The translations under genes and the position numbers were made by a program. DNA of 64,000 nt from Octopus bimaculoides (Eukaryota), in contig NC_068982.1 of NCBI RefSeq assembly GCF_001194135.2, positions 191,210,933-191,274,932 on the forward strand, written 5' to 3'. Positions 3,274 to 56,616 of the stretch are shown piece after piece; position 1 is the stretch's first letter; each line of letters opens with the position of its first letter. The notes below the pieces were generated by a model. It saw nothing but the letters and a program-made list of their open reading frames with translations. It did not search any database and was not told the DNA's origin.

Positions 3274-3307
<34 letters not shown>

Positions 3308-4724: not shown

Positions 4725-4760
<36 letters not shown>

Positions 4761-4828
4761 GTTTACCTTTCTGTATTCGTCTTTTGCAAGATTCTTGTGT
4801 AAACTCGTGTGTTGAAATAGATATTGTT

Positions 4829-11604: not shown

Positions 11605-11637
<33 letters not shown>

Positions 11638-12989: not shown

Positions 12990-13232
12990 TTTCTGGGGAC
13001 GTAATACGTCGAAATACATGACGTCACCTAATTCATTCTCCACCGACCTCAATTGAGTTGGATTACAACATTCTCGCCGCCGCCTCCTTCACCCTCTGCA
13101 GTTGCCACCCTTTTTATTGCCGAGTACCTTTACCAAACAATAAATATTCTAGTTCCAGCTGCGGCTTTCGCTTTCACATTAAATACCTTCGGAACAACAC
13201 ACACTTCCCAACTGTTATATCACTCAACGCAA
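12990..13232 (+). promoter_or_regulatory. Candidate promoter and non-coding first exon of the LITAF-family gene
   Basis: Perfect CRE palindrome TGACGTCA at 13019-13026 in CpG-retaining unique sequence, followed by about 170 nt without ATG ending at a strong donor GCAA|GTAAGT (13232/3). The coding exon at 37205 has an acceptor and needs an upstream exon. The link is inferred. Confidence 0.4.
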
Positions 13233-36138: not shown

Positions 36139-36300
36139 ACTACACTCTCAGAGTGGTTGGCGTTAGGAAGGGCATCCAGCTGTAGAAACATTGCCAGATC
36201 AGATTGGAGCCTGGTGCAGCCCTTCAGCTTGCCAGCTCCCGTCAAACTGTCCAACCCATGCCAGCATGGAAAACAGATGTTAAACGATGATGATGATGAT
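36139..36300 (+). mobile_element. RTE-3'-end-derived repeat family C (many copies, e.g. 17810-17970(-), 20050-20290(-), 20600-20780(-), 31160-31690, 34070-34240(-), 36880-37070(-), 37930-38105(-), 42040-42690, 42950-43135, 44200-44625, 49320-49735, 53630-53835)
   Basis: Shared gagtggttggcgttaggaagggcatccagctgtagaaac...ccaacccatgccagcatggaaa...gttaaacgatgatgatg. Contiguous with RTE ORF ends at 24840-25480 and 42040-42690. Confidence 0.9.
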
Positions 36301-37204
36301 GAAATTCACTCTCAAGGCTTTGTTCAGCCTGAGGCAATAGTAGAANNNNNNNNNNATGATGATGATGAAATTCACTCTCAAGGCTTTGTTCAGCCTGAGG
36401 CAATAGTAGAAGACACTTACCCAAGGTGCCATGCAGTGGGACTGAACCTGGAACCATGTTTGCACCTACTAATAAATAAATAAATAAATAAATAAAATAT
36501 TAAGAAGAAAGTTAAGATATTGCCTTTGTGACTCAGTTTTCATTGGACGATTTTGACATTCCATCATATTAAGAATGGAATGGAAAATTCTGTGGTATTT
36601 CTAGTCCCGTTATTATTTCTGCTGTTGTCCAATCTATTAATTAGTGTTCAGTTAAAACAATAGACTTTGGCGCTATAATTGTTGATTTGCTTAGATTCTT
36701 CTAAATTACCAAAATGATCCGGTTCTGCTATTATTGAACTTCACCATTCCGCATTCTCAGCTGAAGTCTCACCAATATCAATTTTAACTTTCATTTCTTT
36801 TAAGTCTATAATGTTGTTTGACTGATTTCAATCACTTGGCTATGGCCATGTTGGAGCACTGGCTTCAAATTAGCATTATCATCATCATTTAATGTCCATT
36901 TTCCATGCTGGCATGGGTTGGACAGCTTGACAGGAAGTGGCAAGGCTGGAGAGCTGCACCAGGCTCCATTTATCTCCACTGGCATGGTTTCTATGGCTAC
37001 ATGCCCATCCTAACACCAACCACTTTGCACAGTGTCCTGAGTGATTTTTATGTGGCACCAGCACAAATCTGTCACAACAAATTCCTTATGACCCGTACAA
37101 GAATGGAAGAAAAGTGGACATTAAAATCTTTCAACTGTAGTGTTGTTGTTGTTCTTGTTGTTAACAGATTGAATTGTTTTTTATTTTTTGTTTTTGTTCT
37201 TCAG

Positions 37205-37407
37205 ATTCATTTGAAAGAGAGAATTAGTCACCATGAACGACCCACCTCCTCCCTATCCCGGTGCACCAGGAGTTTCCTACCCTCTTCCTGAAAAGGGTGG
37301 GATTCAACCATCAGCCCCAGGAGCCTACTATCCACCCGCTCCTTACCCAACGGCACCTGCTGGTGATATGCAACCCCCACCCCCACAACCAATGATCCAC
37401 CCACAAG
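37205..37407 (+). CDS. LITAF: LITAF/CDIP1-family gene, first coding exon (28 nt 5'UTR, CDS from ATG 37233; 58 aa Pro-rich N-terminus)
   Basis: Acceptor ttttgttcttcag|, in-frame upstream TGA at 37212, Kozak-like CACCATG, donor CAAG|GTAAGT at 37407/8 (phase 1). Encodes MNDPPPPYPG...QPSAPG...YPTAP...HPQ with PPxY, PSAP and PTAP motifs typical of LITAF-family N-termini. Confidence 0.93.
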
Positions 37408-38481
37408 GTAAGTCAAACCCTTACCTTTTCTGGGCCGTGAAGGGAAAGCCCTAATGTCTACACACCACACTTATTGTGTCCTGCTTTTGCTCAAATCATT
37501 GAACTTAATCACCCATTGATGGATATTTGATCTCACTTTACTCTTTACATTCCACTGCTACAACGCTGGGGGGGGGACATAAATATTCATTCCTAGCCTA
37601 TAAGTCTGTATCACCGTTTGTGTGTGTGTGTGTGTGTTACTGTGTCCTTGGCTTCACTTGATGCCATCAAAAAAGTCTTTGATTTCCAATCTTTTGTGAA
37701 AGTATGTCTGATTGAGTGCGGGGGTGGGGGTGGAATATTACTTCTATTAGAAACAGGTGGAGGCTGGTGACAGGAAGAGCATCCAGCTAGATTCATCTCA
37801 ACAGATTTTGTGCTACCCATACATGCAGATGTGGGAAAGTGAATGTTGAACAGCAATGATGACTTTATACACATACACATCCTCACACACACACACGCGC
37901 GCACATGCACTCTCACACACACACACACATCTTTAACGTCCATGTTCCATGCTGACATGGGTTGGACAGTTTGACTGAATCCAATGTGTCCAAGAACTAC
38001 ATCATGCTCCACTGTCCACTTTGGAATGGTTTCTACAGGTGGCCATCCTTCCTAAGGCCAACCAGTTTACATTGTGTGCTGGGTGCTTTTTTTCGTGGCA
38101 CCAACACTAACTGTGCAGCTTGCAAGACAATTGTGAGTGAGTGGTTTTGTGTTTAGAGATGAGAGGTTAAAGTGTGAGAGAAGGGGCCAGAACAGAAAAG
38201 TCCCTTGCTGAAGAAGAGCTACATGGGTGGTGGGGTGATTGGGGAGGTGGAGCTGAAAAGAAATAGAAATAGTGATGAGGTGTGAGGGTGGACCTTTGAG
38301 GTGTTGGGTGAGTAAAAAAAGAGTGGGGACAGGAGAACAGGGAGTGTGGGTGGGTAGAGGTTGCGAGAGTGCATGGGAGAAATGGTGAGGGATGTGTGAT
38401 GCAGGAGAGAGAATTTGGTTGCCCAGCAGGGTGGTCAGTGTAAGATGCAAATAGAACAGACAGCATGAGAAAGAAAGATAG

Positions 38482-38562
<81 letters not shown>

Positions 38563-38976
38563 TATTATATCTTAAACTCTTTTGAAATTAAACTGGCCAT
38601 ATCTGGCCCATATATTCTACCTGTTTTATGTTTGTACTAACCAGATTCAGCCTCTCACACCTACCCTACACTGTCATTAACAATCACATTTTCAAAATCT
38701 TGAAGCTACAAGATAAAGCAGGATTAATTAAAAGCATTGTGATTAAATAAGCATTACATTTGACAGTAATCTGAATGTTAAAGGGTTAAACAAATTATAT
38801 CTGATTGTTATTGCAAACTGTGCCAACTCTGAGTGTGTGTTGCCTGTCGACCCTTGCTACTATGGCACAAACTCTCTCTTTTGCTCCCTTTATAATTCCC
38901 TTTTGTTTTCTTCTCTATCTTTTTCTTCTCTCTCCCTCTCAGTATTTTCTCACACTCATCTTTTAATCTATTTCAG

Positions 38977-39006
38977 AATATGGACCAGCTCCCCTTGGTG
39001 GCCAAG
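38977..39006 (+). CDS. LITAF: LITAF-family coding micro-exon A (30 nt, E-YGPAPLGGQ)
   Basis: Pyrimidine tract + tttcag| acceptor, CAAG|GTAACT donor. 30 nt, phase 1-1, open in frame, Pro/Gly/Tyr composition matches exon 1. Confidence 0.8.
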
Positions 39007-39674
39007 GTAACTATTATCTCAACAATTTCCTTTTAGATTCCTACGCAACAGTTTAACCATGAATGATAGGCCCAATGTCCAAACCCAGCCTGTGTCTCTC
39101 TCGACTCTCCTGGAATTCTGGGATATAAAACATTCAGTGATCCACTCAAAGGAATTTTGTCCAAACTTATATTTTCATCCACACATTCCCGGAACTATTG
39201 CAGAGACAATAGATTAAAACTGTTTATTGTAACAACTTCTAAAATGATAAAGGTTAAGAGTCAGGACCAGAGATTGTGGACAAGTTTCCTCAATAACCGT
39301 TCTCTCTCTGTGAGGAATTCCTGTTACAGTTCTTGTATTGTATTCTTAGACAAAACATTGAAGTCTTCAACTGTTTGGTTTATTTTACTGCTGCCATCAT
39401 TTCAATATATTCTTAACCAAAATATCCAAACTTTGTGAATTATTTATTTCAGGCATTGTATTATATTATTTACCAAACTTTGTAACGTTTAGGACTCGTT
39501 TGGTTCATTGGGAAAACAGATGCCATTTTCCACTGTTTGCAGGAAATTTTCTTGTTTGCTTTTCTTTTTGTGTTATGAGATTACCTAAAACTGGTTTACA
39601 AAATTTAGTTGTGGTTAATTTCTTTCTTGTTCTTATTAACATAGACATCTCTCTCTCTCTCTCTCTCTCTCTCC

Positions 39675-39766
<92 letters not shown>

Positions 39767-42700
39767 AAAGTACATATATATACTTGTGTAGCAAAAGTTA
39801 CAAATGGTTTTTATAGGGGGGTGGAAGTCAAATTCTAGAATGTTCGAGAAAACCTGTCCATGCCATTGCTTCACATTGATTGGTCAGTTTGTAAACCAAT
39901 CACATAAAACTATGGTGGTTTGCTTGTGGTGTCTGACAGTGTATTCAGGGATTCAGTTTCAAATCACCAGTACAGTTTTACTAATAACTTGCTAAATACC
40001 TTCATCAACCTTTGATCATTATTCTCTCAAGTCCTGGAACTTAATAGGGCTGGGCTATCTGGTTTCCATGTTGTATAAGTGACCATGGTCACAACATTCC
40101 CTTCACAAGGGTCCTTATTTACAGCTGAATGGACTGAAGCAGTGTGTATTGGAGTATTTCACTTCAGAACAAACTGCACTGCTTGATCCTGGAATTGAGA
40201 GAAGACCATTATTCTGGGTCTTGTTGAGTTTAGTTTGTTGTATCAATTTATATTCATCCAGTTGTTGCTTAACTGTAGGTCAGTCCTGATCAAATAAACC
40301 TATAATGAAAGACATTCCAGCCATGAGCATCCTGTCTTTTTAGCATTATGTAAGGATGAATGTATTCTTTCCTTGTTTAAGACAATAAGGTGTGATTTTT
40401 AAGGAGAATTTGCTGCTATTTCTAGCAGTTCCAGAGACTATATAGAGACTCTCTTTGCTTGTATTACTTTTGTTCATGATGGAGACAAATCTACCACTGA
40501 TGAATCTATTTTAAGTATCTAAGATGGATATGGATTGACTTGAGGCTGGATGGCCATCTGTGAAGCATTGAAATCAAAGCTGTTTGTATATTAACCAAAA
40601 GGCCTTTGTTATGATAAAAATCGTTTCCCTTTTTGCTTTTTCCAGATTTAACATTATCTAAAACTCTATTTTTTCTTTTAAGGTAAACTGGAACTTTTAT
40701 TTCTTCAAGATTTCAGCTTCATCATCATCACTGCCATCGTCATCTTCCTCATCAATTTCACTAACATCACCACCTCCACCATCACCACCACCATCACCAC
40801 CACCTACAATGTTTCTACTTGTTGTTGTTGTTGTTGTTGTTATATACAGTTCTGATTTCAGATTGTGGGACAAGGCCAGAAATTTTGGAGAAGAGGCTAA
40901 TCAATTACATTGACCCCAGTGTATAACTGGTACTTATTTTATTGACCCTGAAAGGATGAAAGGCAAAGTCCACCTCAGCAAAATTTGAATGCAGTGTGGA
41001 AAGACAAACAGACAGACGAAATTCCGCTAGGCATTTTGCCTGTTGTGCTAACAATTCTTCCAGCTGGATTCTATTACAAATATTAACCAAACTAAGAATT
41101 GTTGTTGTTCCACCAATGCCCTCCCCCCACACACCCACCTTTTCACAGTCCTGTCTGTTGCAGATATTCTGATGATAACTTCCTTCTTCCTCACTTCCCC
41201 ACCCCCACCACATAGTCTTGAGTTGGGGTCTGGGTTGGGGCTCTGTGAAGAGCCACAGACACTGCCCTTTCACCATCCTCATTTAACATCCACTTTTCAA
41301 TGCTTGCTTGGGTCTGGTGGAAATCACTGAAGCAAACTTTTTTTCAGCTGGATGAGTGCCCTTCCTGTCACCAACCCTTCTCTCTTCCAAGCTTGACATG
41401 TTTTCCATGGAAGACTGAAAATGGTACTTATTTATAACTATCCCAGGCTGTTTAGGCAAGGATATTTGTTTCAGTCATTAGACTATGGCCATGCTGGGGC
41501 ACCACCTTGAAGTTTTAGTCAAATGAATCAACTCCAGGACTTATTTTAAGTCTAGTACTTATTCTATCAGTCTCTTTTGTTGAATCGCTAAGTTATGGGG
41601 ATGTAAACACACCAACACCGGTCGTCAAGCAGTGGGGTTGGGGTGGACAAACACAGACACAAGAACACACATGCACATACATATATATGATGGGCTTCTT
41701 TCAGTTTCTGTCCACAAAATCCACTTAAGCCTTTGATTGGCCTGAGGCTATAGTAAAAGACACTTGCCCAAAGTGCTGTGCAGTGGGACTGAACCTGGAA
41801 GCATGTGGTTGGGAAGCAAGCTTCTTACCACACAGCCACATGGTTTGAGGGGAAACTAAATAAAAACAGGTTTCCAAGAATTTCAAATGACTTTTTCAAA
41901 TAAACAGATTAGCAGTCATTTTGTGTAGAATGGTAGAAGCAGCTAGCAGTTAATTGCAATTAATTGCTAATTACAATTAACTGTAATGCATGTAGCCTCG
42001 TTTGTCATCAATTCATTAATCAGGGATTAGAATTACTGTGGTACACTCATGGCATGGATGAGGAGAGCTGTGTGAAGAAGTGTCACACCCTAACAGTGGA
42101 AGGAATCCATGGAAGAGGGAGACCCAGGAAGACACGGGATGAGGTGGTGAAGCATGATCTTTGAACGTTGAGCCTCATGGAGGTAATGGCAAGTGACCGA
42201 GACCTTTGGAGATATGCTGTGATTGAGAAGACCCACCAAGTAAAGTAAGATCACAGCCGTAGCCTATACCAGTGTTGCATAACCAACCCATTTAAAAGTA
42301 CCCTTGGATCATCGGGTGATATGCCGTGCTTGAGAAGACCTATCAAGTCAAATAACATCAAAAATCAAAAGCAAATCAAAACGGAAATTGTAGTTGTGGC
42401 CGATGCCAGTGCTACCTGACTGGCACCTGTGCTGGTGGCACATAAAAAGCACCATCCGTGCTTGGTCAATGCCAATGCTGGCTGACTGGCTCCCATGCTG
42501 GTGGCACGTAAAAAGCACCCACTAACACTCTCAGAGTGGCTGGTGTTAGGAAGGGCATCCAGCTGTAGAAACATTGCCAGATCAGATTAGAGCCTGGTGC
42601 AGCCTTTTGGCTCACCAGTCCTCAGTTAAACCATCCAACCCATGCCAGCATGGAAAAAACAGACGTTAAACAACAACAATGATGATGATGATTGCATTTA

Positions 42701-42839
42701 CAAAGGGCATGGAAACTAATTCATTTATCCTTGTTGTCCTTTTGGAACCAAACTTCCAAGATAAAAAAGGATAGATGTATAATTAGAGTTTGTTGAATGT
42801 CAATATGTTCATCAATTAGACACATTAATATTCTGTAAG

Positions 42840-42916
<77 letters not shown>

Positions 42917-43444
42917 CCTTTTTTTTCATCTTGCAAAGGTATGTGGTGATGGTGTCACATAAAAAGCACCCAGTCCACTCTGTAAAGTGGTTGGCATTAT
43001 GAAGGGCTTCCACCTGTGGAAACCAAAACAGACAGTGGAGCCTGATACAGCCCTCCAGCTTTGCCAGCCTCTTTCAAACCATCCAACCCATGCCAGCATG
43101 GAAAACAGATATTAAATGAGGATTATGATGATGTCAGTGCCACCCCTTACTAATTTCCACAGATTCCAGATTTTATCCTGTAATATATGATCTGCATATT
43201 CAAATCCAATTTAATTACAGTTAATTACTCTTACATTGTAAAACTTAATGGAATATTTTCTTGTATTCAGATGAAGACCAAAATATATTTATTTCATTTA
43301 ATTTTTCAGTATTATTTTAGTTTTTAATAACATCGGTTTTTTTTTCTTTCCCAATGAAGTCTTTCCAAATTCTTCAACCCCCATTGTTCTTCTGTTCTAA
43401 ATACCCTAATTAAGCTTGCTTTTCTTCTAATTCCTGTCTTTCAG

Positions 43445-43474
43445 CTTGGATTCCTCCTCCACCTCCTCCTCATG
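43445..43474 (+). CDS. LITAF: LITAF-family coding micro-exon B (30 nt, A-WIPPPPPPH)
   Basis: ttctaattcctgtctttcag| acceptor with CTAAT branch-like motif, ATG|GTAAGT donor. 30 nt, phase 1-1, polyproline. Confidence 0.83.
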
Positions 43475-45012
43475 GTAAGTCCTTATTCCTCGTCCTCCTC
43501 CTCCTCATCCATTCATGTGGCACACTAACCTAACCCTAATCATGTAGTACATTGCACTGTGTTGAATATTTAAGTCTAAGACCTAGTCTTCATCAAAAGT
43601 CATTATTCAGTGACTTCAATTAATCTTGTGTTTTGTCATCAACCAATTCTAATTTTTCTTTTTTTTCTTTTTTTTTTTTTTTTTNNNNNNNNNNTTTTTT
43701 TTTTTTTTGTTATTTTAAATATCTTACATTCATTGGTACCAACTAAAACCATTGGTTGTACAAAATGGTTGACTTTCAGCTGAAAGCAGTAATAGACATT
43801 GTTTTCAGGAATATTAAAAAAAGCAAATTCAAAGACTCTTTTTCACATGGACAGAAATGGGTGCATAAGTTTTTAAGCATTTACTGCATTCCATTCAATA
43901 TTCACTGCTGGCTAGTAACAGTTTACTGTAAGATGTTTGATATTCATTGATAACTGTCAAACATTCACTGCTGAATGTTAGATATTCACCATTGGCTAAT
44001 AAATGTTCTCTGCAGTCTATTTGATATTCACTGTCGTTTTGTAAATATTTACTACTGAATATTTAACTAAATATTGTAAATGCTAACAAAATGGTCTGAC
44101 CTTATGTGGACCCTAATACAGGACTTTTCAAACGGTGCTCTGAAAATAAAATAATTATATTTAAAAAATACACAAATAAATTTTACGTGTTGTTTTGTCT
44201 GACCTTGATCATTGCCAGAGCAGCTGTCTGGCTTCTGTGCCGGTGACACGTAAATAGCACCATTTGAGCGTGATTGTTACCAGCGTCGCCTTCCTGGCAC
44301 TTGTGCCGGTGACACATGAAAAAACATTTGAGCGAGGTCGTTGCCAGTGCCGCTGGACTGGCTCCTGTGCAGGTGGCACGTAAAAAACACCATTTTGAGC
44401 GTGGCTGTTGCCAGTACCGCATGACTGGCCCTTGTGCCGGTGGCACATAAAAAAGCACCCAGTACACTCTGTAAAGTGGTTGGCATTAGGAAGGGCATCC
44501 AGCTGTAGAAACTCTGCCAGATCAGATTGGAGCCTGGTGCAGCCATCTGGTTCACCACTCCTCAGTCAAAACGTCCAACCCATGCTAGCATGGAAAGCGG
44601 ACGTTAAATGATGATGATGATGTTTTCATAATTATACTTTGGGTAAAAAAATTATTTTAAAATTTATTAATTAAACTAGATAAATCACCCCCTGCCCTCC
44701 TTTTTTTTTAGTATATTACCAAAACCCTGTATAAATGTTTGACTTTTTTTTCACAAAGTGCTCTAAAATACTTTTTCTGTTTGCTCTAACGTTTGAGATT
44801 AACTGCACTAACATGACACAGTGTTCTTACAACATGTAGTTATAACATGTAGTAACAACATGATGCAATTACATGATGTAAAATGAAGAAGAAAGTCCAT
44901 ATTCTTTCAATCTATTTGGAAGCTACATGTTAAGAGATTTTCTCTTTTCAAAGAGCTGTGTATGGTGTGCATGCATTTGTGTGTGTGCTTGTATGCATCC
45001 CCCTGTGTGTGT

Positions 45013-45048
<36 letters not shown>

Positions 45049-46513
45049 ATTTTGCATTTGCCTCAATGTGGAACAAGATGGTTTCTTTATCCAAATTTAG
45101 TCTTTTTTTTCAGATTGTTTTCTTCATAATATTTTTGCTTCTCTTTTATATGGAAACGGTTTCAGTGGAGAAGAGATGACCAACACAAATAACTTGAACT
45201 GACATCTGGTCAGTGAGTCTGCTAGAAACAGTAGCCAAATCTTCTTCTCAATATTCTAAAAACTTTAAAACAAATTTAGGAAAGAAAATACTTATTGCAA
45301 GATTTGGAAAAAGTAAAAAATGGAATGGTCATGGAAGGGAGATCTGGGATCATAGATCTTATCAATTACAACAGATCAGTAAAATAACTTATTTCCCTTT
45401 CTTCAAACTTTTCTGTTACTCTCACCAATTGACTTTGAAAACCAGGGCCACCCCAATCAACATTGTCTGTATTGGGCTAACCTAAGCTAGGTATAGAGAC
45501 AGGTGGGCTTAAATACAGGTGTGTGATGTATTAAGTCAAAGTGTGCTGTGTCCTGTTAAAAGCACCAATCCTTATCTTGGCACCGAAATAAAGCAATCAA
45601 TTTTTAGGTGGTGGCTGCTTGAGAAACTGTAAGTATCTTTTTTTCTAATTCTCAGTCATAGTCAGACGTTGAGGAGAGAGGACAGGTCACTGAGAAGGTC
45701 AGGAATAGCAACAAATAAGACTTGAACTAACGACCAATTGATTGTTTAAGCAGCACATTGGCCCTTTAGCATTTAGATTTCTTTGCCAAATGTAAGACTT
45801 ATTTCTTCATGTTGTTTTGAATTGATCACACATTAACTTGTAACTTCAAGATTTCAATGGTGTGTTTTTAGAATGACATTGTAGGGTAGATGTGAGAGGT
45901 TGAAGCTGGACAGTTTTTACATAAAACTGGTAGAATATTTGGGCTGGATATGACCAGATTAAATGCTAAAGGTTGAAACAAATGATTGAGTTAATTAGTT
46001 TGATATTTAATACAGCATTGCCCTCCATCAGAATCTGAGTACCTCAGCCAGTGTCCAACAAACTCCTCTCATCTTTCTGCCACCTCTTTAGTCAACTATG
46101 ACCCAACATGACACACAATCTCATTTCTCTATCTTCTGAAAATTTGAGACCTTGTATGAAGGGGAGACAGAGATATTTCTACTGCTACCGTTAATCATAA
46201 TTCTGGAACCATTTGATCATAACTCTTTTGTTACCATATTTCTGTTGAAATGCACTGCTTTTGTTTCAATTAATTCTGAAAATAATGAAGAACTTACTAA
46301 AATAAATTTGCCATTATTAAATGAACATTTAGAATTTTAGCATTAAATTTTCATGCAAGGTTTTAATTTATTTAAAACAGAAAACCTGATCTTGGGCATC
46401 TTGGTATCAAACGAGTTAATCTGTTGACATCCTTGCATGAATTTGCATATTAATCATTTTGCTTTTAGTCTCAATGAAATTAATGAAATTTTAACAAATT
46501 TGTTACCCAACAG

Positions 46514-46531
46514 CCTGGGCACCCCCTCCAG
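46514..46531 (+). CDS. LITAF: LITAF-family coding micro-exon C (18 nt, A-WAPPP)
   Basis: ttgttacccaacag| acceptor, CCAG|GTAAGT donor. 18 nt, phase 1-1, resembles micro-exon B (AWxPPP). Confidence 0.78.
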
Positions 46532-47544
46532 GTAAGTCCTTCTGTGCATGGACTTCATTGCAGATTTTTTTTTTTATCACCCCGTGATTGTGATTGTTTC
46601 CTTTGTATACCAATAGTATTGATGTATTGATCACATTGCATGTTCCTCTGGTGAACATTCAATAATACTCCATCTGTTGTTTGTCACTTCTCCTTATTTT
46701 AATCATCTCATGTTGTGAAGCCGTCAATGATACAACAAAAGAATATTTTACTCACTTTTCTTCCTGCATCTTCATTGATTCATGCCTTACACAAACACAC
46801 ACACACACACAAATGCTGAACAGTGAGAAGGAGTGCTCAATACAGCATTGGTGGATAGATATTATTTATTTATGGGTTATCAAGGCTACCAATAGTTTCA
46901 TGTAAACAAATCTTCACAATTGTTCAAGCATGCTACGTGGGAACATTGGTACTCCTCCCCACTTTGGATTCCCATCCAAAATAAAGATGAGTACCAACAC
47001 TTCCATGTGGTATGCTTGAACCATTATGAGGATTTCTTTACATGAAAGCCTCAGTAGCCTTATCAACCCCCAAACGAAGAATAGTATCCCATCAATGTGG
47101 TGTTGAGCACTCCTTCCCACTGTTCAGTATTTGTGTGTGTTCTAGTTCCACTTCTTTAGTTGATTGTAGGTTTAGGCTGTTTATGCACTTGAAGAGTGAA
47201 TTGCAAAAATGAAATGCAGCATCCCAAAATATTTGGTTTACTCTGGCAATTCTATTCTACATAAAAAGGAGAACGAATTGTAAAATCTGTGTAGACATGT
47301 ATTTAGTTCACTCCTGGTTGTCGTTGTTTTCTGTTGATTTCTTTCATCAACCCACCTCCACCTCCTGCATCATTGTGTTTCCTTTGTTTCTCCCCCTCCT
47401 CACTTCTCCAGTATGTTACCTGCTGTAGTATCTGTTGTAGTACAGTGGTAGTAGTTTATATAAAGAAACAGTTTGTGACACAAAGCTAGAAATCACCCAT
47501 CAGTGTTTTTCTTTTACGCATTTTGAACATCTATTATTGTTGTT

Positions 47545-47551
47545 GTTATTA

Positions 47552-47591
<40 letters not shown>

Positions 47592-47755
47592 GAAAGACTC
47601 GAATAGTTCTCACTTACCAGTTATTCTTTACTCGAAAGCAGGCAACAACAAATCCTCAAAGGTTTCAAGTAGTGCCTTCTTCTCCTCTGACTCAAAGAGA
47701 CAATATTCTCCTTAGAATGTGAGCTGTACCCAACAATACTGTCTTCTGGATCACC

Positions 47756-47802
<47 letters not shown>

Positions 47803-47850
47803 TACTATTATTATTATTATTATTATTATTACTATTACTATTATTATTAA
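47545..47850. repeat. (ATT)n microsatellites (others: (CT)n 34315-34375, 39650-39765, 42843-42912; (CA)n 38485-38560)
   Basis: Direct reading. Confidence 0.9.
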
Positions 47851-48633
47851 TAACAAATTGCAGGTTTCAAGTGTTGAAAGTATCTTTATTATACAAATGT
47901 TTTATTTCCTGTTGTTGTACATCAAACATTATATTTATCTCTCTTGATATATCTAATGACATGGTTGTCTCTCACTTTTTAATGTTATTTCAAAAAATAA
48001 ATTACTTTCTTTCCCATAATGGTTCTGAAAATAACTCTTTCATCAGGAATCTCCAATTCATTTTCAGAAACAACACAAAATAACAAAGATATTTGAGGTT
48101 TTGTGGGATTTTTTTCTCTCCAAAATCTTCAAAGAAGAAAACCATCTTTTTTGGTTCCGTAGTCTTTTAGACTTAACAGTTTCTAACTGCATTTCAATCT
48201 TAGAAAAAAACAACTGTTGTCTTGAAGAGTTGAAAGCTCATTTAAACATATTAACGAGTTAAAATATTGATTAGTTAGTTGGTCAAGATTTAGATTAATC
48301 AATAACTGTACAGCATGACCAGTATTATGTTGTAGTTTCACTAAAAATGGCAAACTGGCAGAACTATGAACACACTCAGCAAAATGTTTGATGGTATGTC
48401 TTCTGGTTCTTTACGTTGTGAGTTCAGTTCTGGTGAGGATCACTTTGCTTTTCATCCTTTCAGGGTCAATAAGTACCAGTTGATTGCTGGGGATGGAGGG
48501 GGGGGGGCTCAGTGTAATCGACTTATCCCCCACTCTGCCCCTAAATTGCTGGCCTTGTGCCAAAGGGTGAAACCATTATTATAGTTTCATTCAGTAAATA
48601 ATGTTTATTGGAAATAATCTGGGATTTCTTTAA

Positions 48634-48852
48634 CCCTTTAGCATTCAGATTACTTTGTCGAGTGTAATCCTTATTAATTCCCGTTGTTTTGAATTAATTG
48701 TGCATTATTTGGTACCTTTGAGATTTCAGTGATATAATCGATGATTTATAGAATGACATTGTGGGGTAGGTGTGAGAGGACAGATCTGGCCAGTTTGAAC
48801 AAAAAAAAGAAAAACATTTAGGACAGATATGACCAGTTTGAATGCTTTAGGG
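48634..48852. mobile_element. piggyBac-like MITE family 1 (other copies 38576-38785(-), about 45762-45973, about 52455-52588(-), fragment about 53540-53605)
   Basis: TTAA on both sides; termini CCCTTTAGCATTCA ... TGAATGCTTTAGGG (12/14 TIR). The 38576 copy is also TTAA-flanked. Confidence 0.85.
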
Positions 48853-51101
48853 TTAAAAAAAAAAATAGATAAAACAAATAAAAGCAAGGCTGTGTTGTTA
48901 AGAAGCTTACTTTGGAACCACATGACTTCAGGTTCAACCCCACTACACAGCACTTTGGTAAGTGTCTTCTACTGTAACCCTGGGCCAACCAATTCTTTCT
49001 GAGTGGATATAGTTGATGGAAACTACTTGTGTGTGTGTGTGTGTGTGCCTTTGTATTTGTCTTCCACCACCACTTGACAACTGCTGTTGGTTTGTTTATG
49101 TCCTTATAACTTAGCAGTTCAGCAAAATCCTGAAAGAGCATTTTCTAAACTTCCATATTAGAGAAGATTTTAATGCATGAATTGGTGGCTACTGTCAGCT
49201 TCCAAAAGTACCATCTTTGAAATCACAAGCAAAAACACTCTACTGTGCCAGTCTAATATTTAGGGATCCTCAGCCTTTCAACTGCTTTTCTAAAGAAATC
49301 AGAAATATATAAATGTGCTGTGCGTGAGAAGACCCGGCAAGCCAAGTAAGATCGTTGCCAGTGCCCCTGGACTGGCTCTTGTGCGGGTGGCACATGAGAT
49401 GCACCATTTTGAGCGTGGCCGTTGCCAGTACCGCCTGACTGGCTCCTGTAGGATTTTCGAGTGAGATCGTTGCCAGTGCCCCTGGACTGGCTTGTGCGGG
49501 TGGCACATAAAAGACACCATTTCGAGCGTGGCCGTTTTCGTGCGGGTGACACGTAAAAGCACCCACTACACTCTCTGAGTGGTTGGCATTAGGAAGGGCA
49601 TCCAGCTGTAGAAACTCTGCCAAATTAGATTGGAGCCTGGTGTTGCCATCCGGTTTCACCAGTCCTCAGTCAAATCGTCCAACCCATGCTAGCATGGAAA
49701 GCGGACGTTAAACGACGATGATGATGATGATGATGATAAAAAAACTCTACTGAAACATTAAAAAAACAACATTGGATAAACTCCTAATGATGATACCAGA
49801 CCAGCCAAGCATACAAGGATACACTCGGGGAAGATCAGCTTCTACAGACTCAATCATAGACCAACTTCGTGCCATAAAGTGGCAACAAAACTGTTAGAAA
49901 ATAAAGGCAGTGCTCCAGCATGGTCGTAGTCTTACAGCTGATGTGGTTGGGAAGCAAACTTCTTACCACACAGCTGCCTAGATGCTGTATAACTCCTTGG
50001 GAAAGGTTAAAAGAGCGGAAAGGAAGCAGCTAGAAGTGCCCAGGACACGGAATGGAACCCGTATCAACAACAATAAACAGCTCCTACAACCCTTCATCAT
50101 TGTTTCTGTGGAGTTAAATTACCAAACTACTTAATCTTCTTCATCATCATCATCATTTACATGTACTTCTATTATTCCTGATGTAAAGAATGGTTATATT
50201 GTTCCTGTTGTCGTTAAGGTCATTCCTTTCTCCTTGTCTTGACATCAGAGGATGCCTGTAAACAAGCACCACCGTCCTAAAAGTGTAAACCATCTCTGAC
50301 CACAGGAAGGAAATGTTACCTTTGTTTGGATGCAGGTGAGGATTGGGGATAGAAACGGTGTCTGGCCATAGAGAATCTGCCTCAACAAATTCCATCTGAC
50401 CCATGCCAGCATGGAAAAGTGGACGTTAAATGATGATGGTGCACTCATACCAGTGCCACGTGGGTAGCACTCATGCTGGTTCCATGTGAAAAGTACCCAG
50501 CACACCCTGTAAAATGGTTTAGGGTGGGCGTCCAGCTATAGAAACCATACCAAAACAGATGACTGGAGCCTGGTATGGGCCCTTCCCCACCACTCCCAAC
50601 CTTTCCACCTCCTGTCAAACCATCCAACCCATGCCAGCATGGAAAACGGGTTAAATGATGAACCTGAACCAACCCACTCCATATGTAAATGTATAGACAT
50701 TGGTAAATAAATATAGGAGAGAAGGGGTTGAAGATGGGGAAATAAATAAATGGAAAGAGAAACAAATCAACACTCGTACATGAGAAGCCAAAGGGACCCA
50801 CAACCACATGATGTGAGAAAACTGATCAAGTAATGACTGGGCCAAGCGACATCAATATAACTAGTTGAAGATTTGTACACGTAGACTCTACCGACTTAAA
50901 AATCATGCAACATAGGCTTTTTATTGCAAAAATTCACTTCTCTTGTTTTATTCTCTTGTTTTATATTGTGACTGTGATGTTTTGTGTTTCTGAGTGCAAA
51001 GGGTTGGTGAAGTGACATGCAGACATGTAAGTAGGCCAAGAGAGGTACAGATATGACATGTATATAGCACAGGAATGCAAGTATGATGTATGTATACCAA
51101 A

Positions 51102-51203
51102 AGTACAGATATTACATATATAGGAGTACAGATATTACATGTATAGGAGTACAGATATTACATATATAGGAGTACAGATATTACATATATAGGAGTACAG
51201 ATA
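51102..51203. repeat. 23-bp minisatellite, about 4.4 copies
   Basis: Unit AGTACAGATATTACATATATAGG starting at 51102, 51125, 51148, 51171, partial at 51194; one substitution. Confidence 0.95.
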
Positions 51204-51503
51204 CAATAAACAGGGAACATGCCATACACATACAGGCATTTGGATACAAGACCAACAAAGCTGAATGTAAATTTCAATTTAAATTTCTTTTCCTCGTTAA
51301 AGAAACTAATCAAAATCATTCTGATATGAAACCACATTGCCATTTATGAAATTTCTCATTGTAAAAAATTTTAATTAATTTTTCTCGTTATCTTTTTCAA
51401 ATTTCTAAATTGTAGATGATGATTTTTTAATATTCCAGATATTTTTCTCATAACTGTTGTTGTTGTCATTAATATTGTTATCAAAACTATTTTATATTTG
51501 TAG

Positions 51504-51530
51504 GTTATGGGCCGATGCCAACAGCTCCAG
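51504..51530 (+). CDS. LITAF: LITAF-family coding micro-exon D (27 nt, G-YGPMPTAP)
   Basis: tttatatttgtag| acceptor, CCAG|GTAAGT donor. 27 nt, phase 1-1, carries a PTAP motif, resembles micro-exon A (YGP). Confidence 0.83.
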
Positions 51531-54252
51531 GTAAGTTCACTTCTTCTCTTTCCCTCTCTCTTCTTCCATCCTCACCATCACTCCATGTACAAAGTGTCAC
51601 AGTCTACCTAAATTCATTCACCAAACAATAAGCAATTTTCTTTTACCAAATGTTAGCCTGACATTCATTAGTCAGGTATCATCCCATTATTCATTAGTCA
51701 CACCCCCAACAAAACCACCCCGCCCCTGCCCATATTTAGTGTTGGAGAATAACATTTCCAGCAATCTCTTTTTCTCACAAAAGATTCCGAAATCGTATGA
51801 ACATTCTCTAGATTTCCACCACCACCAAACTCTCTTTTATATTCTCCAATCCCGAGAATATTTTTAGAAACTAAATCCATTCTCCATCATCTCAGATAAT
51901 TCCATTATTCTTCCTGTCTTCTTTCTACAAGAGCTTTTCAGCTCAACTTTTTATCTTATTTATCATTTTTTTTTTTTTTAATATTTCTTTTTCTCTTCAT
52001 TGAATTCGAATAGATTAGGGAACCGGTGACCTGTTTATTGTGTGAGAAATCTAAAAATGTGATATTTTAGAATCGTTGTTGTGCTTCAGACATAATTCCT
52101 TGTCTTGGCTTCAAAGACTAAAATGGGTTTTATTTCTATTTTTAGGCAGTGTATTATTATTGTGAAGATTTGAAGGACATTTGGTTGTTATTTCTAGCAG
52201 GTTGTGAGACTACAGATTAAAAAAGGAAGTTGAAGAATTAGGATGGGGGGAGAAATTCTGTGTCAATGAGAAAGCCTCTAAATGGTCACTTCATCTGCTA
52301 GAAATAGCAGACAAATAACATAACTACCTTAAGAAAATTAGGTCAGGCATAGCCGTGTGGTTAAGGAGTTTGCTTCCCAACAAGTGCCAGTAAGGCGACG
52401 CTGGTAATGATCACACTCAAATTTGACTAAAAATACCCTGACTCTTTTATGTTCAAACTCACCAGATCTGGTCTCTCACACTGACCCTACAAAGTCATTC
52501 TAAAAATAAATCACAACACTGAAATCTCAAAGCTATAAGTTAAAGCATGATTAACTGAAAGCAATGGGGATAATGATTATCTTTGACAAAAGGTTAACGA
52601 CATCAATAACCTACAGATATAATTCTACCTGTCCATCTGTGATTATAACGAAGCTGTTTGTTAATTAGTTATGAGTAATTTTTACTAAAAGAAAGCAAGT
52701 ATTAAAGTCTACACTTGTCTATTTATGATTTAATTGAACGGTGGCACTGAAATGTCTGCAAGTCTTCCTGAATTTCACTAGAAATTCCTGAATGAAGAAT
52801 TCTCATTGCTAAATGGTTCATCAATTCTAAAATCTGCTGAGATTTCTATCAGAAAAGTAAACAGTTTTGTAAGAATTTTAAGGAGTTGCCATTTGCACCA
52901 GTTGAGTTGTATGCCAACACTCCACCACCTCCATCACCTCCACACACACAAAGAGGAAGTCCCCTAAAGAGATAACTTTTGTTGTTTACTGATGAAGATC
53001 AAAACTAAACAAGAAAATAGGTGAAACTAATTAACATTTAATTGCTATTAAGGTTTAATTCTTGATTATAATGTCAGAAATCTTTTAGAGAGAGAGAGAG
53101 AGAGAAGTAAATGCTTTTATTCTCTCTCTCTTCTTTTCTCTCTCATTCTCTCTTTGGAATTTGACTTAGTATACCCCCACCCACATCACTTCCACCCCAT
53201 CACCACCACCACACTACCACCCACACATGTTGTTTTCTCATTGATTTTCTTTGTTTCTTTCTGCAGATTCTCTTCCTCATCTAATTTTGTTATCATTTCT
53301 AATTTTTAATTAATTTTTCTTTTAACTTTAACTTCGATATATTTCCTGTATGTGGATGTAAAACTGTGTGTGTGTGTGTGCATACACACACTCACACACA
53401 CACACACAAGTGCGAAGTGCTGACATAGCTGTTTGGTCTGGAATTTCAATTCCCATCCGCATTGCTTTGGGTTCTGTCCCACTGCATGTCACCTTGTGTA
53501 GGTGTCCAAGTATTCTCTCTGTTTTATGTCCAAGCTGTTAAGATCAGGCCTCTCACACCTACCCTACAATCTCGTTCTTGAACAATCATATCTTTGAAAT
53601 CTCAGCTATGAGAAAATTGAAAGCCAGTGCCGCCTGACTGTCCCCTGTGCCGGTGGCACATAAAAAGCACCCACTACACTCTTGGAGTGGTTGGCATTAG
53701 GAAGGGCATCCAGCTGTAGAAACTTTGTCAGATCAGATTGGAGCCTGGTGCAGCCATCTGGTTCGCCAGTCCTCAGTCAAACTGTCCAACCCATGCCAGC
53801 ATGGAAAACAGACGTTAAACAATGACGATGATGAGAAAGACTAAGTAATACCTTCGACAGAGTAATCCGAAAGCTAAAGGGTTATGCTTAACCAACCAAA
53901 ACCTAGAATGGATTTGGTTGGAAACTGAAAGAAGCCTGCGGTATATGCATGTATGGGTATGTTTTTGTATCTCCTTATCTTGACATCTCACAACATTGTA
54001 AAAAGGCATCAACATCATACGAGTGATGTCCTTCGTTTCCAATCTTCCATGAAAACATGTCTGGCCTGGAAGAAATATTACTTTGCTTGGAAACAGGTGA
54101 GGGTTATCCAGCTCCCTTCCTGCCTCAACCCTCATTCATCATTTAGTAAACTCACACCACTCCTACATCTCTACTCATCCCTTACTTTCTCTGATTCTTG
54201 CAACTCCCACCACCACCACCAGCCACCCTTCCTGTTCTTATACTCCCCCACC

Positions 54253-54332
<80 letters not shown>

Positions 54333-54954
54333 ACATTATTTCTCTTTCCAGCACTACACACATCACTTCTGTCCATTTTTCTATAATGCGAGTAGCCATG
54401 TAGCTCCTTCACAGCAAGAAACCTGTTCATTTCTGGCCCCTTCTCTCATCTCCACAAAGCTGCCTCTCTCTCAACTGTAGCCCCACTCCTTCAAAGGGGT
54501 TCTTAGTACTGCAAGCTGCATGGAAATCTCACTGGTGCTGTAAACAAAGCACCCACTACACTCTTTAAAGTGATTGGCCCTAGAAAGGACATTCAGCTGT
54601 GAAAACTATGTCAAAGGAGACCTTGGAACTTGGTACAGTCCTCTGACTTGTTGGATGCTGTCAAATCATCCAGTTCCTGAAAGATGATAATGCATATAAG
54701 TATAGATACATATGCAAGGTACCTTTTATTTAAGTACCTAATTCAACTGAATTCTGAGTGTGAAAAGATGTTTCCAAAAGTCATTGGGGCTGTGTTGTCT
54801 TTTTCTTTGATTCTGTAAGCATGTTCATGAATGTTTGGTTTATGAAATTCAAAAAGGTGGCCAAGGTTTTTGTTAGGAAGATGGTGAATAATCTTGTGCC
54901 ATCTTCTCACCCCAAATGATACTTACTTCTTCAATTGCTACTCTTTGATTGCAG

Positions 54955-55123
54955 TGCTCCCACAGACGACCGTTGTCATCCAGCAACACCCACAGATTTT
55001 GCATTTTGGTGAATCCTCCGTACAAACTCGTTGTCCCAAGTGTAATGCTGACATCATGACAAGTATTCATTATGAAACTGGGAACCTAAGCTGGGTCATT
55101 TGCCTCCTCCTCAGTTTCTTTGC
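54955..55123 (+). CDS. LITAF: LITAF-family coding exon: N-half of LITAF zinc-binding domain (first CxxC and hydrophobic segment)
   Basis: ctttgattgcag| acceptor (phase 1), GC|GTAAGT donor (phase 2). Encodes V-LPQTTVVIQQHPQILHFGESSVQTRCPKCNADIMTSIHYETGNLSWVICLLLSFF; FG..S....CPxC and GxLxWxxC are LITAF-domain hallmarks. Confidence 0.96.
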
Positions 55124-56145
55124 GTAAGTCAAAAAATAGAAACAAGAAGCAATTTCTTTCTTTTCTGTCCAATATTGATCTTCATTTAAAACTGAAGTGA
55201 TGGGGAAATCCGCCGGGAAAGCAGATGCACAAGAGTTAGTGTATTACTGGTATATAGGCTGTGTGAGGAGAAGCTTTGCTTCCCAGCCACATGGCTCTAG
55301 GTTCAGTCCCACTGTGTGGCTCCTCGGACAAGTGTCTTCTGCTATAACCTTGGGCTGTCCAAAGCCTTCGGAGTAAGTTTGGTTGATGGAAACTGAAAGC
55401 AGCCTCTTTGTGTGTGTTTTCCACTACTTCTTGACAGCTGGTTTACATTTCAGTAACTTAGTGGTTCATCAAAAGACACCAATGAAATAAGTACCAGGTT
55501 TAAAACAAACAAGTACTGGGGTCAATTCATTCAACTAAAGTTTCAAGGCGGTGCCCCAGCATGTCCACAGTCTGACTGAAACAAACAAAAGATAGCTGTA
55601 CCCTAAATAGGGTCCACCTGGAATTCACTGATATGTTGTCAAAAACGTGTGGGTGAGAAAGAGAAAGAGAGAATATGTACACACACACCCATGCCTATAT
55701 TCATACCTATTTTCCACTGCATTAATCCCTTTGAGAAAGGCTTGAATATCACAACATCCTTATTCACTTTTGCCACCTCCGTCTATAAAAAGTAAAACCT
55801 GGATTTATTAACAAACCTTAGCACAAGCATGAACATCACAACAGCTACTTCACACCACTAGAACTCAATACAGTTGATTGTCCAGTGATAGTGTTTGATT
55901 AAATCTATTTTATAAAACCTTTTCTGAAATGTTTTAATGTCTAGGCTTAGCTTCTTGTTAAAATTATCGTTTTTCACATTATTGACCTCATCTTTTGAGA
56001 TAAAACTATAATTTTTGATATTCTATGTGTGGATATGGGCATGGTGCCAGACTGACCGAACCCACCTGATAAAGATTGAAGATCAAACTGATTGACATGC
56101 AGTGTGGATGTTAAAATAGTCTTCATTTGTAAAGATAACGTTTAA

Positions 56146-56362
56146 CCCTTATTCTGTTTCTGTTGACCGATGCTACCTTTGTTTCAATTAATTTTGAAAA
56201 TAATGAAGAATTTAGTAAAATAACTTTGTCATTTTTAAGCTGTCGTTTGAAACGTAAATTAATATAAAATTTTAATGGGAAGTTTTAATTAAGATCCCTT
56301 TAAAACAGGAAACTTGTATCATAGAAACAATAACGGTCTGAGGCAGGTTGGTGTGCAAAGGC
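56146..56362. mobile_element. piggyBac-like MITE family 2 (second copy about 46223-46415)
   Basis: TTAA|CCC start and TTAA end. Shares tttgtttcaattaatt[c/t]tgaaaataatgaagaa...aaaataa[a/c]tttg[c/t]catt with the 46.2-kb copy. Confidence 0.65.
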
Positions 56363-56507
56363 TTAATTAATGCTTCAAACCATTATAATATTATTAATTA
56401 AAACAATTATATTATTATTAATTAAAACAATAATATTTAGTAATTTTAAAATCTCATTCTTACTTTATTTTGTTGTTTATTTGTATTTTTCTTCTTTTCT
56501 TTTCCAG

Positions 56508-56616
56508 TTGTATTTGTGGCTGTTGCTTAATTCCATTCTGCATGGATAGTACCAAAGACATTGTCCACACATGTCCAAACTGTTCTCATTTTATCGGCCG
56601 TTATTCACGCCTCTGA
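56508..56616 (+). CDS. LITAF: LITAF-family terminal coding exon (C-half of LITAF domain, stop TGA 56614-56616)
   Basis: Long pyrimidine tract + tttccag| acceptor (phase 2). Encodes A-CICGCCLIPFCMDSTKDIVHTCPNCSHFIGRYSRL*, with CCLIPFC...KDxxHxCPxC...IG. Total spliced CDS 558 nt = 185 aa + stop. Confidence 0.96.

What the first reader, a model, noticed from the sequence alone, without database searches (positions are those of the whole stretch)
38977..51530. Cassette of four symmetric proline-rich micro-exons in the LITAF/CDIP1 gene
Seen: four tiny exons (30, 30, 18, 27 nt), each with an AG acceptor and GTAA donor, are spread over 12.5 kb. All are phase 1-1 and multiples of 3, and they splice in frame to give ...HPQ|EYGPAPLGGQ|AWIPPPPPPH|AWAPPP|GYGPMPTAP|VLPQ... 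Known: this region of LITAF/CDIP1 is the disordered docking platform for WW-domain ligases and ESCRT factors. Inference: any subset can be skipped without frameshift (up to 16 combinations), giving a combinatorial set of endosomal adaptor isoforms. Automated annotation easily misses such exons, and none appears in the ORF track.
Basis: partly seen in the sequence, partly recalled or inferred. Interest (0 to 1): 0.82.

Follow-up and report, generated by a model that had tools for sequence, protein, structure and literature searches.

The report
Octopus LITAF micro-exons, already annotated
The four tiny proline-rich exons are real parts of the Octopus bimaculoides LITAF gene, but they and their main splice variants are already in the public annotation, and only the two middle exons are seen to be skipped.

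Summary
Observation confirmed. The window is Octopus bimaculoides chromosome CM046602.1. Four phase 1-1 exons of 30, 30, 18 and 27 nt (u1 38977-39006, u2 43445-43474, u3 46514-46531, u4 51504-51530) lie between coding exon 1 (ends 37407) and the LITAF-domain exon (starts 54955). Spliced together they give a 185-aa protein identical to RefSeq XP_014772878.1.

The N gap (43685-43694) lies in a poly-T run inside the u2-u3 intron. Its flanks are colinear with the gap-free O. sinensis intron, so it does not affect the reading frame.

The claim that annotation misses these exons fails here. RefSeq already lists four isoforms: all exons, minus u3, minus u2, and minus both. O. sinensis and O. vulgaris annotations list three each.

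Assembled RNA contigs from 12 runs show:
- u1 and u4 in 12 of 12 runs;
- u2 and u3 both skipped in 8 runs;
- only u3 skipped in 3 runs;
- all four exons included in 1 run;
- no direct joining of exon 1 to the LITAF-domain exon.

This supports 4 isoforms, not 16.

The same layout of small phase 1-1 cassette exons occurs in Argonauta and abalone genomes. Matching isoform series occur in cuttlefish transcripts and clam annotation. Function is untested. Including u3 creates a second PPxY-type motif (PPGY) at the u3/u4 junction.

The parts
13007..13232 (+). Non-coding first exon (5' UTR). The 3' end at 13232 (CAA|gtaagt) is firm. The 5' end is a minimum only.
   Evidence: In 8 of 8 RNA runs the 30 letters before 37205 are ACTTCCCAACTGTTATATCACTCAACGCAA. 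This string occurs once in the window, at 13203-13232, followed by gtaagt. The longest contig runs 226 letters upstream of 37205 (X7). The start given assumes a single upstream exon.
37205..37407 (+). Exon with the start codon (ATG at 37233). It encodes residues 1-58: PPPY, PSAP and PTAP motifs in a proline-rich region. Donor AAG|gtaagt, phase 1.
   Evidence: Contigs of 8 RNA runs lie exactly on 37205-37407 and continue into u1. Translation, motifs.
38977..39006 (+). Micro-exon u1, 30 nt, (E)YGPAPLGGQ. Constitutive in all the evidence seen.
   Evidence: The 30 letters behind 37407 equal u1 in 8 of 8 runs. The u1 end GCCAAG precedes u4 in 8 runs. 30 of 30 nt are identical in O. sinensis. Present in all annotated isoforms.
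43445..43474 (+). Micro-exon u2, 30 nt, AWIPPPPPPH. Alternative cassette exon.
   Evidence: Its end CTCATG precedes u4 in X1, X3 and X10, with 87 nt between e1 and e6. It is included in X7, where 105 nt lie between e1 and e6. It is absent in 8 runs, with 57 nt between e1 and e6 checked in X5, X9, X16 and X17. RefSeq isoforms exist with and without it. O. sinensis has one extra CCT.
43685..43694 (.). Assembly gap (N10) inside a poly-T run of the u2-u3 intron. Not part of any exon.
   Evidence: One search gives the position. One search shows colinear flanks against the gap-free O. sinensis intron.
46514..46531 (+). Micro-exon u3, 18 nt, AWAPPP. Alternative cassette exon and the one least often included. 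It has the weakest polypyrimidine tract (0.55). Joined to u4 it makes PPGY.
   Evidence: Its end CTCCAG precedes u4 in run X7 only, where 105 nt lie between e1 and e6. Present in XP_014772878 and XP_014772880, absent in the X2 and X3 isoforms. Two synonymous differences in O. sinensis. Tract values, motif.
51504..51530 (+). Micro-exon u4, 27 nt, GYGPMPTAP, carrying a P(T/S)AP motif. Constitutive in all the evidence seen.
   Evidence: Its first 24 nt are read in the letters before 54952 in 12 of 12 RNA runs. Its last 3 nt, CAG, cannot be told apart from the intron's last 3 nt. One synonymous difference in O. sinensis. Present in all annotated isoforms.
54955..55123 (+). Exon encoding the first half of the LITAF domain: the CPKC knuckle and the start of the hydrophobic stretch.
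   Evidence: Contigs of 12 RNA runs lie on it. The joint 55123 to 56508 (GT..AG) is seen in reads and in a contig. Pfam match covers residues 114-182.
56508..56616 (+). Last coding exon: the rest of the hydrophobic stretch, the HTCPNC knuckle and the stop codon. The 3' UTR continues beyond 56616 and its end was not determined.
   Evidence: 109 of 109 nt are identical in O. sinensis.

Best explanation
This is the Octopus bimaculoides LITAF/CDIP1 homologue. LITAF is a small endosomal adaptor with a proline-rich cytosolic N-terminus and a zinc-knuckle, membrane-inserted LITAF domain.

Shown:
- The linker between the two parts is built from four phase 1-1 micro-exons.
- The outer two (u1, u4) are included in everything seen.
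- The inner two (u2 AWIPPPPPPH, u3 AWAPPP) are cassette exons. Skipping them yields four in-frame proteins of 185, 179, 175 and 169 aa.
- The form lacking both is the one most often assembled.
- Which form dominates differs between samples of the same study.

Inferred:
- The cassettes tune the length and polyproline content of the disordered linker, and so the spacing and number of docking motifs presented to WW-domain ligases and ESCRT-I.
- Specifically, joining u3 to u4 creates PPGY, a second PPxY-type motif that is absent from all forms without u3.
- The array probably arose by duplication of small exons and is an old feature of mollusc LITAF-like genes. Argonauta, abalone, cuttlefish and clams show the same kind of cassette series.
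For: Identity:
- 100% match to XP_014772878.1.
- The window equals GCA_001194135.2 CM046602.1.
- Pfam PF10601 at 87.9 bits.

Annotated isoforms:
- Four in O. bimaculoides, three each in O. sinensis and O. vulgaris.
- They differ only by u2 and/or u3.

RNA contigs:
- u4 precedes e6 in 12 of 12 runs.
- The exon before u4 is u1 in X2, X4, X5, X6, X9, X11, X16 and X17; u2 in X1, X3 and X10; u3 in X7.
- e1 continues into u1 in 8 of 8 runs.
- The letters between e1 and e6 number 57, 87 or 105, as expected for these forms.
- The dominant form differs within studies P1 (X1, X3 against X2, X4), P2 (X7 against X5, X6) and P3 (X10 against X9, X11).

Conservation:
- Orthologous exons in O. sinensis differ only by synonymous changes (u3, u4) or one extra in-frame codon (u2).
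- Argonauta hians has five phase 1-1 micro-exons of 45, 27, 21, 18 and 30 nt.
- Sepia esculenta transcripts differ only by a 42-nt block, equal to two 21-nt units. Proteins of 169, 176, 183 and 190 aa are found.
- Haliotis rufescens has 21-, 21- and 24-nt phase 1-1 exons, skipped in five annotated combinations.
- Mercenaria has 10-aa units in four annotated combinations.

Motifs:
- PPPY 5-8, PSAP 26-29, PTAP 39-42 and 90-93, and PPGY 83-86 spanning the u3/u4 junction.
- PPxY motifs mediate LITAF's binding to WW-domain proteins (WWOX, NEDD4, Itch), and a P(S/T)AP motif mediates TSG101 binding (PMC3033906).
Against: - No function was tested. The region is disordered and evolves by indels: u2 has an extra codon in O. 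sinensis, e1 lacks 6 nt in O. sinensis, and the number of units differs between genera. Variable inclusion could therefore be tolerated noise.
- Contigs give only the dominant path per run and no quantification. Tissue identities of the runs are hidden.
- The u3-only form (175 aa) was seen only in the annotation, not in the 12 contigs.
- PPGY binding to any WW domain is not shown. Outside octopods the cassette units do not create a PPxY.
- The flanks of the four micro-exons show no significant DNA similarity to each other, so duplication is inferred from the peptides only.
Confidence: 0.8

Rival explanations
1. All four micro-exons are independent cassettes, giving up to 16 isoforms of an endosomal adaptor.
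For: All four exons are symmetric (phase 1-1, multiples of 3), so any subset would stay in frame. In abalone three such exons are annotated in five of eight combinations, including the form that skips all three.
Against: u1 and u4 are present in every annotated isoform of three Octopus species. They are also present in the contigs of 12 of 12 RNA runs. No e1-to-e6 form was found.
Confidence: 0.07
2. Skipping of u2 and u3 is splicing noise or neutral variation in a disordered linker, with no regulatory or functional meaning.
For: u3 has a weak polypyrimidine tract (0.55). The linker tolerates indels and changes in unit number between species. No functional data exist, and no paper in the library holds both LITAF and microexon.
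Against: The dominant assembled form switches between samples within three separate studies, including a full-inclusion sample at depth 40. u2 is skipped in most runs despite a strong acceptor tract (0.85) and a consensus donor. The exons, their splice sites and their alternative use are kept in O. bimaculoides, O. sinensis and O. vulgaris. Comparable cassette series exist in cuttlefish, abalone and clams.
Confidence: 0.2
3. The length variants are assembly or annotation artefacts, or allelic indels in a repetitive proline-rich coding stretch, and not splicing products.
For: Proline-rich repeats are prone to misassembly, and the window has gaps.
Against: Each variable block matches one genomic segment bounded by AG and GT, with 3-5 kb between segments. 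Contig insert lengths are exactly 57, 87 or 105 nt. The only gap in the region is an intronic poly-T run.
Confidence: 0.01

Closest known systems
RefSeq models of this very gene: O. bimaculoides LITAF homolog isoforms X1 (XP_014772878.1, 185 aa), X2 (XP_014772879.1, 179 aa), XP_014772880.1 (175 aa) and X3 (XP_014772881.1, 169 aa). Also the O. sinensis and O. vulgaris sets, including the deposited O. vulgaris LITAF protein record AUR53648.1.
   Same: Identical exons and identical products. The four isoforms are exactly the four combinations of u2 and u3.
   Different: Nothing in the exons themselves. Added here are independent contig evidence for three of the four forms, clearance of the gap, and the comparison across molluscs.
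Human LITAF (SIMPLE) and CDIP1
   Same: C-terminal LITAF domain (CxxC, about 22-25 hydrophobic residues, HxCxxC). Proline-rich N-terminus with PPxY motifs (bound by WW domains of NEDD4, Itch and WWOX) and P(S/T)AP (bound by TSG101). Sources: PMC3033906 and the PMC5095921 abstract.
   Different: To my own knowledge no array of cassette micro-exons is described for the vertebrate genes; this was not tested here. The octopus protein has one constitutive PPxY, plus a second (PPGY) only when u3 is included.
Frame-preserving alternative micro-exons in disordered or interaction regions, as in the bilaterian neural micro-exon programme driven by SRRM4/eMIC (own knowledge)
   Same: Very short (18-30 nt), multiples of 3, canonical splice sites, long flanking introns, lying in a disordered docking region, and variably included.
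   Different: No UGC motif lies within 22 nt upstream of any of the four acceptors. Tissue specificity is unknown because run labels are coded. u1 and u2 at 30 nt exceed the strict 27-nt limit.
LITAF/CDIP1-like isoform series in other molluscs: Argonauta hians, Sepia esculenta, Haliotis spp., Mercenaria, Ruditapes, Pomacea
   Same: Small in-frame cassette units (7-10 aa) in the Pro/Gly/Tyr-rich linker just upstream of the LITAF-domain exon. In Argonauta and Haliotis they are shown to be separate phase 1-1 micro-exons kilobases apart.
   Different: Unit sequences and numbers differ: AWxPPP in octopods, MYGPPxG in cuttlefish, GQPxYGx in abalone. Exon-by-exon homology was not established.

Membership tests
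LITAF/CDIP1 (zf-LITAF-like, PF10601) proteins | Match to the Pfam LITAF-like zinc ribbon model above the gathering score | tested here: met
   87.9 bits against a cut-off of 23.8, residues 114-182, profile positions 2-69 of 70.
LITAF/CDIP1 (zf-LITAF-like, PF10601) proteins | CxxC knuckle, then a hydrophobic stretch of about 22-25 residues, then an HxCxxC knuckle (definition from PMC3033906, and the PMC5095921 abstract) | tested here: met
   CPKC 120-123, WVICLLLSFFACICGCCLIPFC 140-161, HTCPNC 170-175.
LITAF/CDIP1 (zf-LITAF-like, PF10601) proteins | Proline-rich N-terminus with PPxY and P(S/T)AP motifs | tested here: met
   PPPY 5-8, PSAP 26-29, PTAP 39-42 and 90-93. PPGY 83-86 is present only with u3.
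LITAF/CDIP1 (zf-LITAF-like, PF10601) proteins | Zinc binding, monotopic membrane insertion, late-endosome localisation, binding of NEDD4-family ligases and TSG101 | not testable with these tools
   These need biochemistry or cell biology.
Alternative cassette micro-exons | Very short exon (27 nt or less in the strict sense, about 30-51 nt or less in looser usage) with canonical AG/GT sites | tested here: met
   u3 is 18 nt and u4 is 27 nt (strict sense). u1 and u2 are 30 nt (loose sense). All have AG acceptors and GTAAG or GTAAC donors.
Alternative cassette micro-exons | Present in mature transcripts | tested here: met
   RNA contigs show u1 and u4 in 12 of 12 runs, u2 in 4 runs and u3 in 1 run.
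Alternative cassette micro-exons | Alternative inclusion (both the included and the skipped form exist) | tested here: inconclusive
   Met for u2 and u3. Not met for u1 and u4 in any annotated isoform or contig. Rare skipping cannot be excluded, because contigs drop minor variants and the raw reads were too few.
Neural SRRM4/eMIC-dependent micro-exons | UGC-containing enhancer close upstream of the 3' splice site, and nervous-system-specific inclusion (own knowledge of the family) | tested here: not met
   No TGC lies in the 22 nt upstream of any of the four acceptors. Tissue specificity could not be tested because run labels are coded.

The most novel reading that the evidence does not exclude
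An ancient, mollusc-wide array of phase 1-1 micro-exons in the linker of LITAF/CDIP1-type endosomal adaptors is spliced in a regulated, sample-specific way. This sets linker length and the number of docking motifs. In octopods, including the 18-nt exon u3 switches on a second WW-binding PPxY motif that exists only across the u3/u4 exon junction. In the open literature searched, no paper holds both LITAF and microexon.
Probability: 0.3. Interest if true: 0.45.

Novelty: already known. Interest (0 to 1): 0.25.

Why it matters
The finding does not add to the octopus gene catalogue: the exons and four isoforms have been in RefSeq since the first annotation. Its remaining value is as an example. 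[quoted passage not shown] If the switch changes WW-ligase or ESCRT recruitment, through the junction-encoded PPGY or the polyproline run, it would be a simple, testable case of micro-exon control of endosomal sorting. That step is untested.

Tried and rejected
I therefore used narrow stretches on e1 and e6, and read the neighbouring exons from the loose-end letters and from contig coordinates.

2. The raw-read runs X22-X24 were too shallow (2-5 reads on e6), so there are no inclusion percentages. A second run search found no other raw-read runs.

3. I looked for spliced transcript contigs of the octopus isoforms to use as a reference. None is on record for the 179- and 169-aa forms, and only the genome for the 185-aa form. 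I did not hand in a hand-spliced sequence, because the tool asks for letters copied exactly from the window.

4. A scan of the introns 37408-54954 for a fifth phase 1-1 proline-rich micro-exon found none. The other AG...GTRAG candidates encode non-proline peptides.

5. A test for DNA-level duplication between micro-exon flanks found no score above the shuffled maximum: u2-u3 scored 27 against a maximum of 27, and u1-u4 scored 31 against 33.

6. Look-up of Haliotis isoform X3 failed, but isoform X1 worked.

7. Literature: no paper holds both LITAF and microexon. Octopus papers use LITAF only as an immune marker.
Full report
**What is in the sequence**

The window has 38.6% G+C and eight runs of N. 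Positions 34233-59616 are letter-for-letter identical to GCA_001194135.2 CM046602.1, the Octopus bimaculoides chromosome-scale assembly.

- u1 38977-39006: 30 nt, cag|AATATGG...GCCAAG|gtaact.
- u2 43445-43474: 30 nt, cag|CTTGGATT...CTCATG|gtaagt.
- u3 46514-46531: 18 nt, cag|CCTGGGCACCCCCTCCAG|gtaagt.
- u4 51504-51530: 27 nt, tag|GTTATGG...GCTCCAG|gtaagt.

All four are phase 1-1. The full coding model joins exon 1 (acceptor 37205, ATG 37233, donor after 37407), u1-u4, exon 6 (54955-55123) and exon 7 (56508-56616). It reads as an open 185-aa frame, MNDPPPPYPG...HPQ|EYGPAPLGGQ|AWIPPPPPPH|AWAPPP|GYGPMPTAP|VLPQ...RYSRL*. The product matches Pfam zf-LITAF-like at 87.9 bits against a cut-off of 23.8. 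It has the CPKC knuckle, the hydrophobic stretch and the HTCPNC knuckle that define the LITAF domain (definition in PMC3033906).

**The assembly gap**

The N10 at 43685-43694 lies 211 nt downstream of the u2 donor and about 2.8 kb upstream of u3, so it is inside an intron. It interrupts a homopolymer (T29-N10-T14).

The orthologous O. sinensis intron (L002, no N) aligns colinearly over both flanks (window 43400-43950 to L002 14595-15172). It has only a short T-rich stretch at that place.

RNA contigs join exons across this intron, with exact insert lengths (see below). The gap is therefore irrelevant to coding continuity and frame. An intron scan found no further proline-rich phase 1-1 candidate exon.

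**Already annotated**

A protein search with the 185-aa product returned a 90% cluster of ten named proteins. Aligned, they are:
- O. bimaculoides XP_014772878.1: 185 aa, 100% identical, all four exons.
- XP_014772879.1: 179 aa, minus u3.
- XP_014772880.1: 175 aa, minus u2.
- XP_014772881.1: 169 aa, minus u2 and u3.
- O. sinensis X1, X2 and X3: 184, 178 and 167 aa.
- O. vulgaris: 184, 178 and 167 aa. The 178-aa sequence also stands under a separately deposited record named LITAF, AUR53648.1.

The claim that automated annotation misses these exons therefore does not hold here. The annotated variation is confined to u2 and u3.

**Transcript evidence**

I instead laid Logan RNA contigs on narrow stretches around exon 6 and exon 1, and read the neighbouring exons from the unaligned letters.

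Before exon 6, the first 24 nt of u4 are read in all 12 RNA runs; its last 3 nt, CAG, match the intron end and were aligned there. The six letters before u4 identify the preceding exon:
- GCCAAG (end of u1) in X2, X4, X5, X6, X9, X11, X16 and X17.
- CTCATG (end of u2) in X1, X3 and X10.
- CTCCAG (end of u3) in X7.

Behind exon 1, the next 30 letters are u1 in all eight runs tested.

Contig coordinates give the number of letters between 37407 and 54955:
- 57 (u1+u4) in X5, X9, X16 and X17.
- 87 (u1+u2+u4) in X1, X3 and X10.
- 105 (all four) in X7.

No contig joins 37407 to 54955 directly.

The dominant form differs between samples of the same study: P1 (X1, X3 against X2, X4), P2 (X7 against X5, X6) and P3 (X10 against X9, X11). 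This suggests regulated use. Contigs report only the major path, tissue labels are hidden, and the three raw-read runs gave just 2-5 reads on exon 6, so no inclusion percentages can be given.

The 5' UTR exon ends at 13232. X15 is a DNA run.

**Conservation**

In O. sinensis all four exons lie at orthologous places with intact splice sites:
- u1 is 30 of 30 identical.
- u2 carries one extra CCT codon.
- u3 has two synonymous changes.
- u4 has one synonymous change.

Argonauta hians has five phase 1-1 micro-exons (45, 27, 21, 18 and 30 nt), with the AWxPPP unit present three times.

In Sepia esculenta, assembled transcripts from the same studies are identical except for a 42-nt block. The species was identified through run accessions cited in PMC10442824, PMC10571815 and PMC11917092. 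The block equals two 21-nt MYGPP(S/P)G units. Proteins of 169, 176, 183 and 190 aa are all found.

In Haliotis rufescens three units are separate phase 1-1 exons of 21, 21 and 24 nt spread over about 13 kb. They are annotated in five combinations. Mercenaria shows 10-aa units in four annotated combinations. Ruditapes and Pomacea show similar length series.

The layout is thus general for mollusc LITAF/CDIP1-like genes and already visible in public annotation. I found no paper in the library that holds both LITAF and microexon.

**How it most likely works**

Shown: u1 and u4 behave as constitutive exons, and u2 and u3 as cassette exons, giving four proteins that differ only in the disordered linker.

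Splice-site strength does not explain the pattern. u2 is often skipped yet has a strong acceptor tract (0.85) and a consensus donor. Only u3 has a weak tract (0.55).

Inferred: the cassettes change linker length and polyproline content between the N-terminal docking motifs (PPPY 5-8, PSAP 26-29, PTAP 39-42) and the membrane-embedded domain. u4 itself carries a further PTAP (90-93). Joining u3 to u4 makes PPGY (83-86), a PPxY-type motif that exists only in u3-containing forms. It is conserved in O. sinensis, O. vulgaris and Argonauta.

Human LITAF uses two PPxY motifs to bind WW domains of NEDD4, Itch and WWOX, and a P(S/T)AP motif mediates TSG101 binding (PMC3033906). A switch between one and two PPxY motifs is therefore a plausible but untested mechanism.

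**Comparison and verdict**

The gene is a member of the LITAF/CDIP1 family; all sequence-level defining features are met.

The exons fit the general class of frame-preserving micro-exons in disordered interaction regions. They lack the upstream UGC motif typical of the SRRM4-dependent neural class (own knowledge), and their tissue specificity is unknown.

Novelty is rated as already known. Interest is low to moderate, resting on the untested junction-motif idea and on the conservation across molluscs.

Noticed in passing
window 46531/51504 (u3/u4 exon junction; residues 83-86 of the 185-aa form): The motif PPGY (PPxY type) is encoded across the u3/u4 junction and exists only when the 18-nt exon u3 is included. 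The same junction motif is present in O. sinensis, O. vulgaris and Argonauta.
   Followed up: partly
L011 (Argonauta hians) 1872-12242; L012 (Haliotis rufescens) 4374-17139; L003-L010 (Sepia esculenta transcripts): The same linker architecture occurs elsewhere. Argonauta has five phase 1-1 micro-exons. Abalone has three (21, 21 and 24 nt), skipped in five annotated combinations. Cuttlefish transcripts differ by 21-nt units.
   Followed up: partly
window 56176-56230 (intron between e6 and e7): A roughly 50-nt piece is covered by RNA contigs at word depth up to about 14,000 and by hundreds of raw reads, whose continuations differ. It is a fragment of a repeat carried by many transcripts, not expression of this intron.
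   Followed up: no
window 36139-36300, 36874-37065, 42395-42700, 42946-43132, 44200-44640, 49467-49730, 53623-53834: A SINE-like element of about 160-200 nt occurs in many copies and both orientations in the introns. It matches many places in the O. sinensis locus at 73-88% identity.
   Followed up: no
window 32700-33095 (+) and 757-1113 (-): Open frames that look like transposon remnants: a mariner/Tc1-type transposase C-terminus (PDLAPSDYYLF) and a LINE reverse-transcriptase fragment. Judged by eye from the ORF list, with no search run.
   Followed up: no
window 37233-37407 against L002; window 43445-43474 against L002: There are in-frame length differences between O. bimaculoides and O. sinensis in the proline-rich coding part. 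Exon 1 lacks 6 nt (Ala-Gly) in O. sinensis, and u2 has one extra CCT (Pro). The linker tolerates indels.
   Followed up: yes
window 13019-13026: A palindromic TGACGTCA (CRE-like) lies about 200 nt upstream of the donor of the non-coding first exon, near where the longest contig starts. It may be a promoter element.
   Followed up: no
window 38484-38555, 39680-39743, 42843-42912, 54257-54331: Long microsatellites lie in the introns: (AC)36, (TC)32, (TC)35 and (CT)21(ATC)11.
   Followed up: partly
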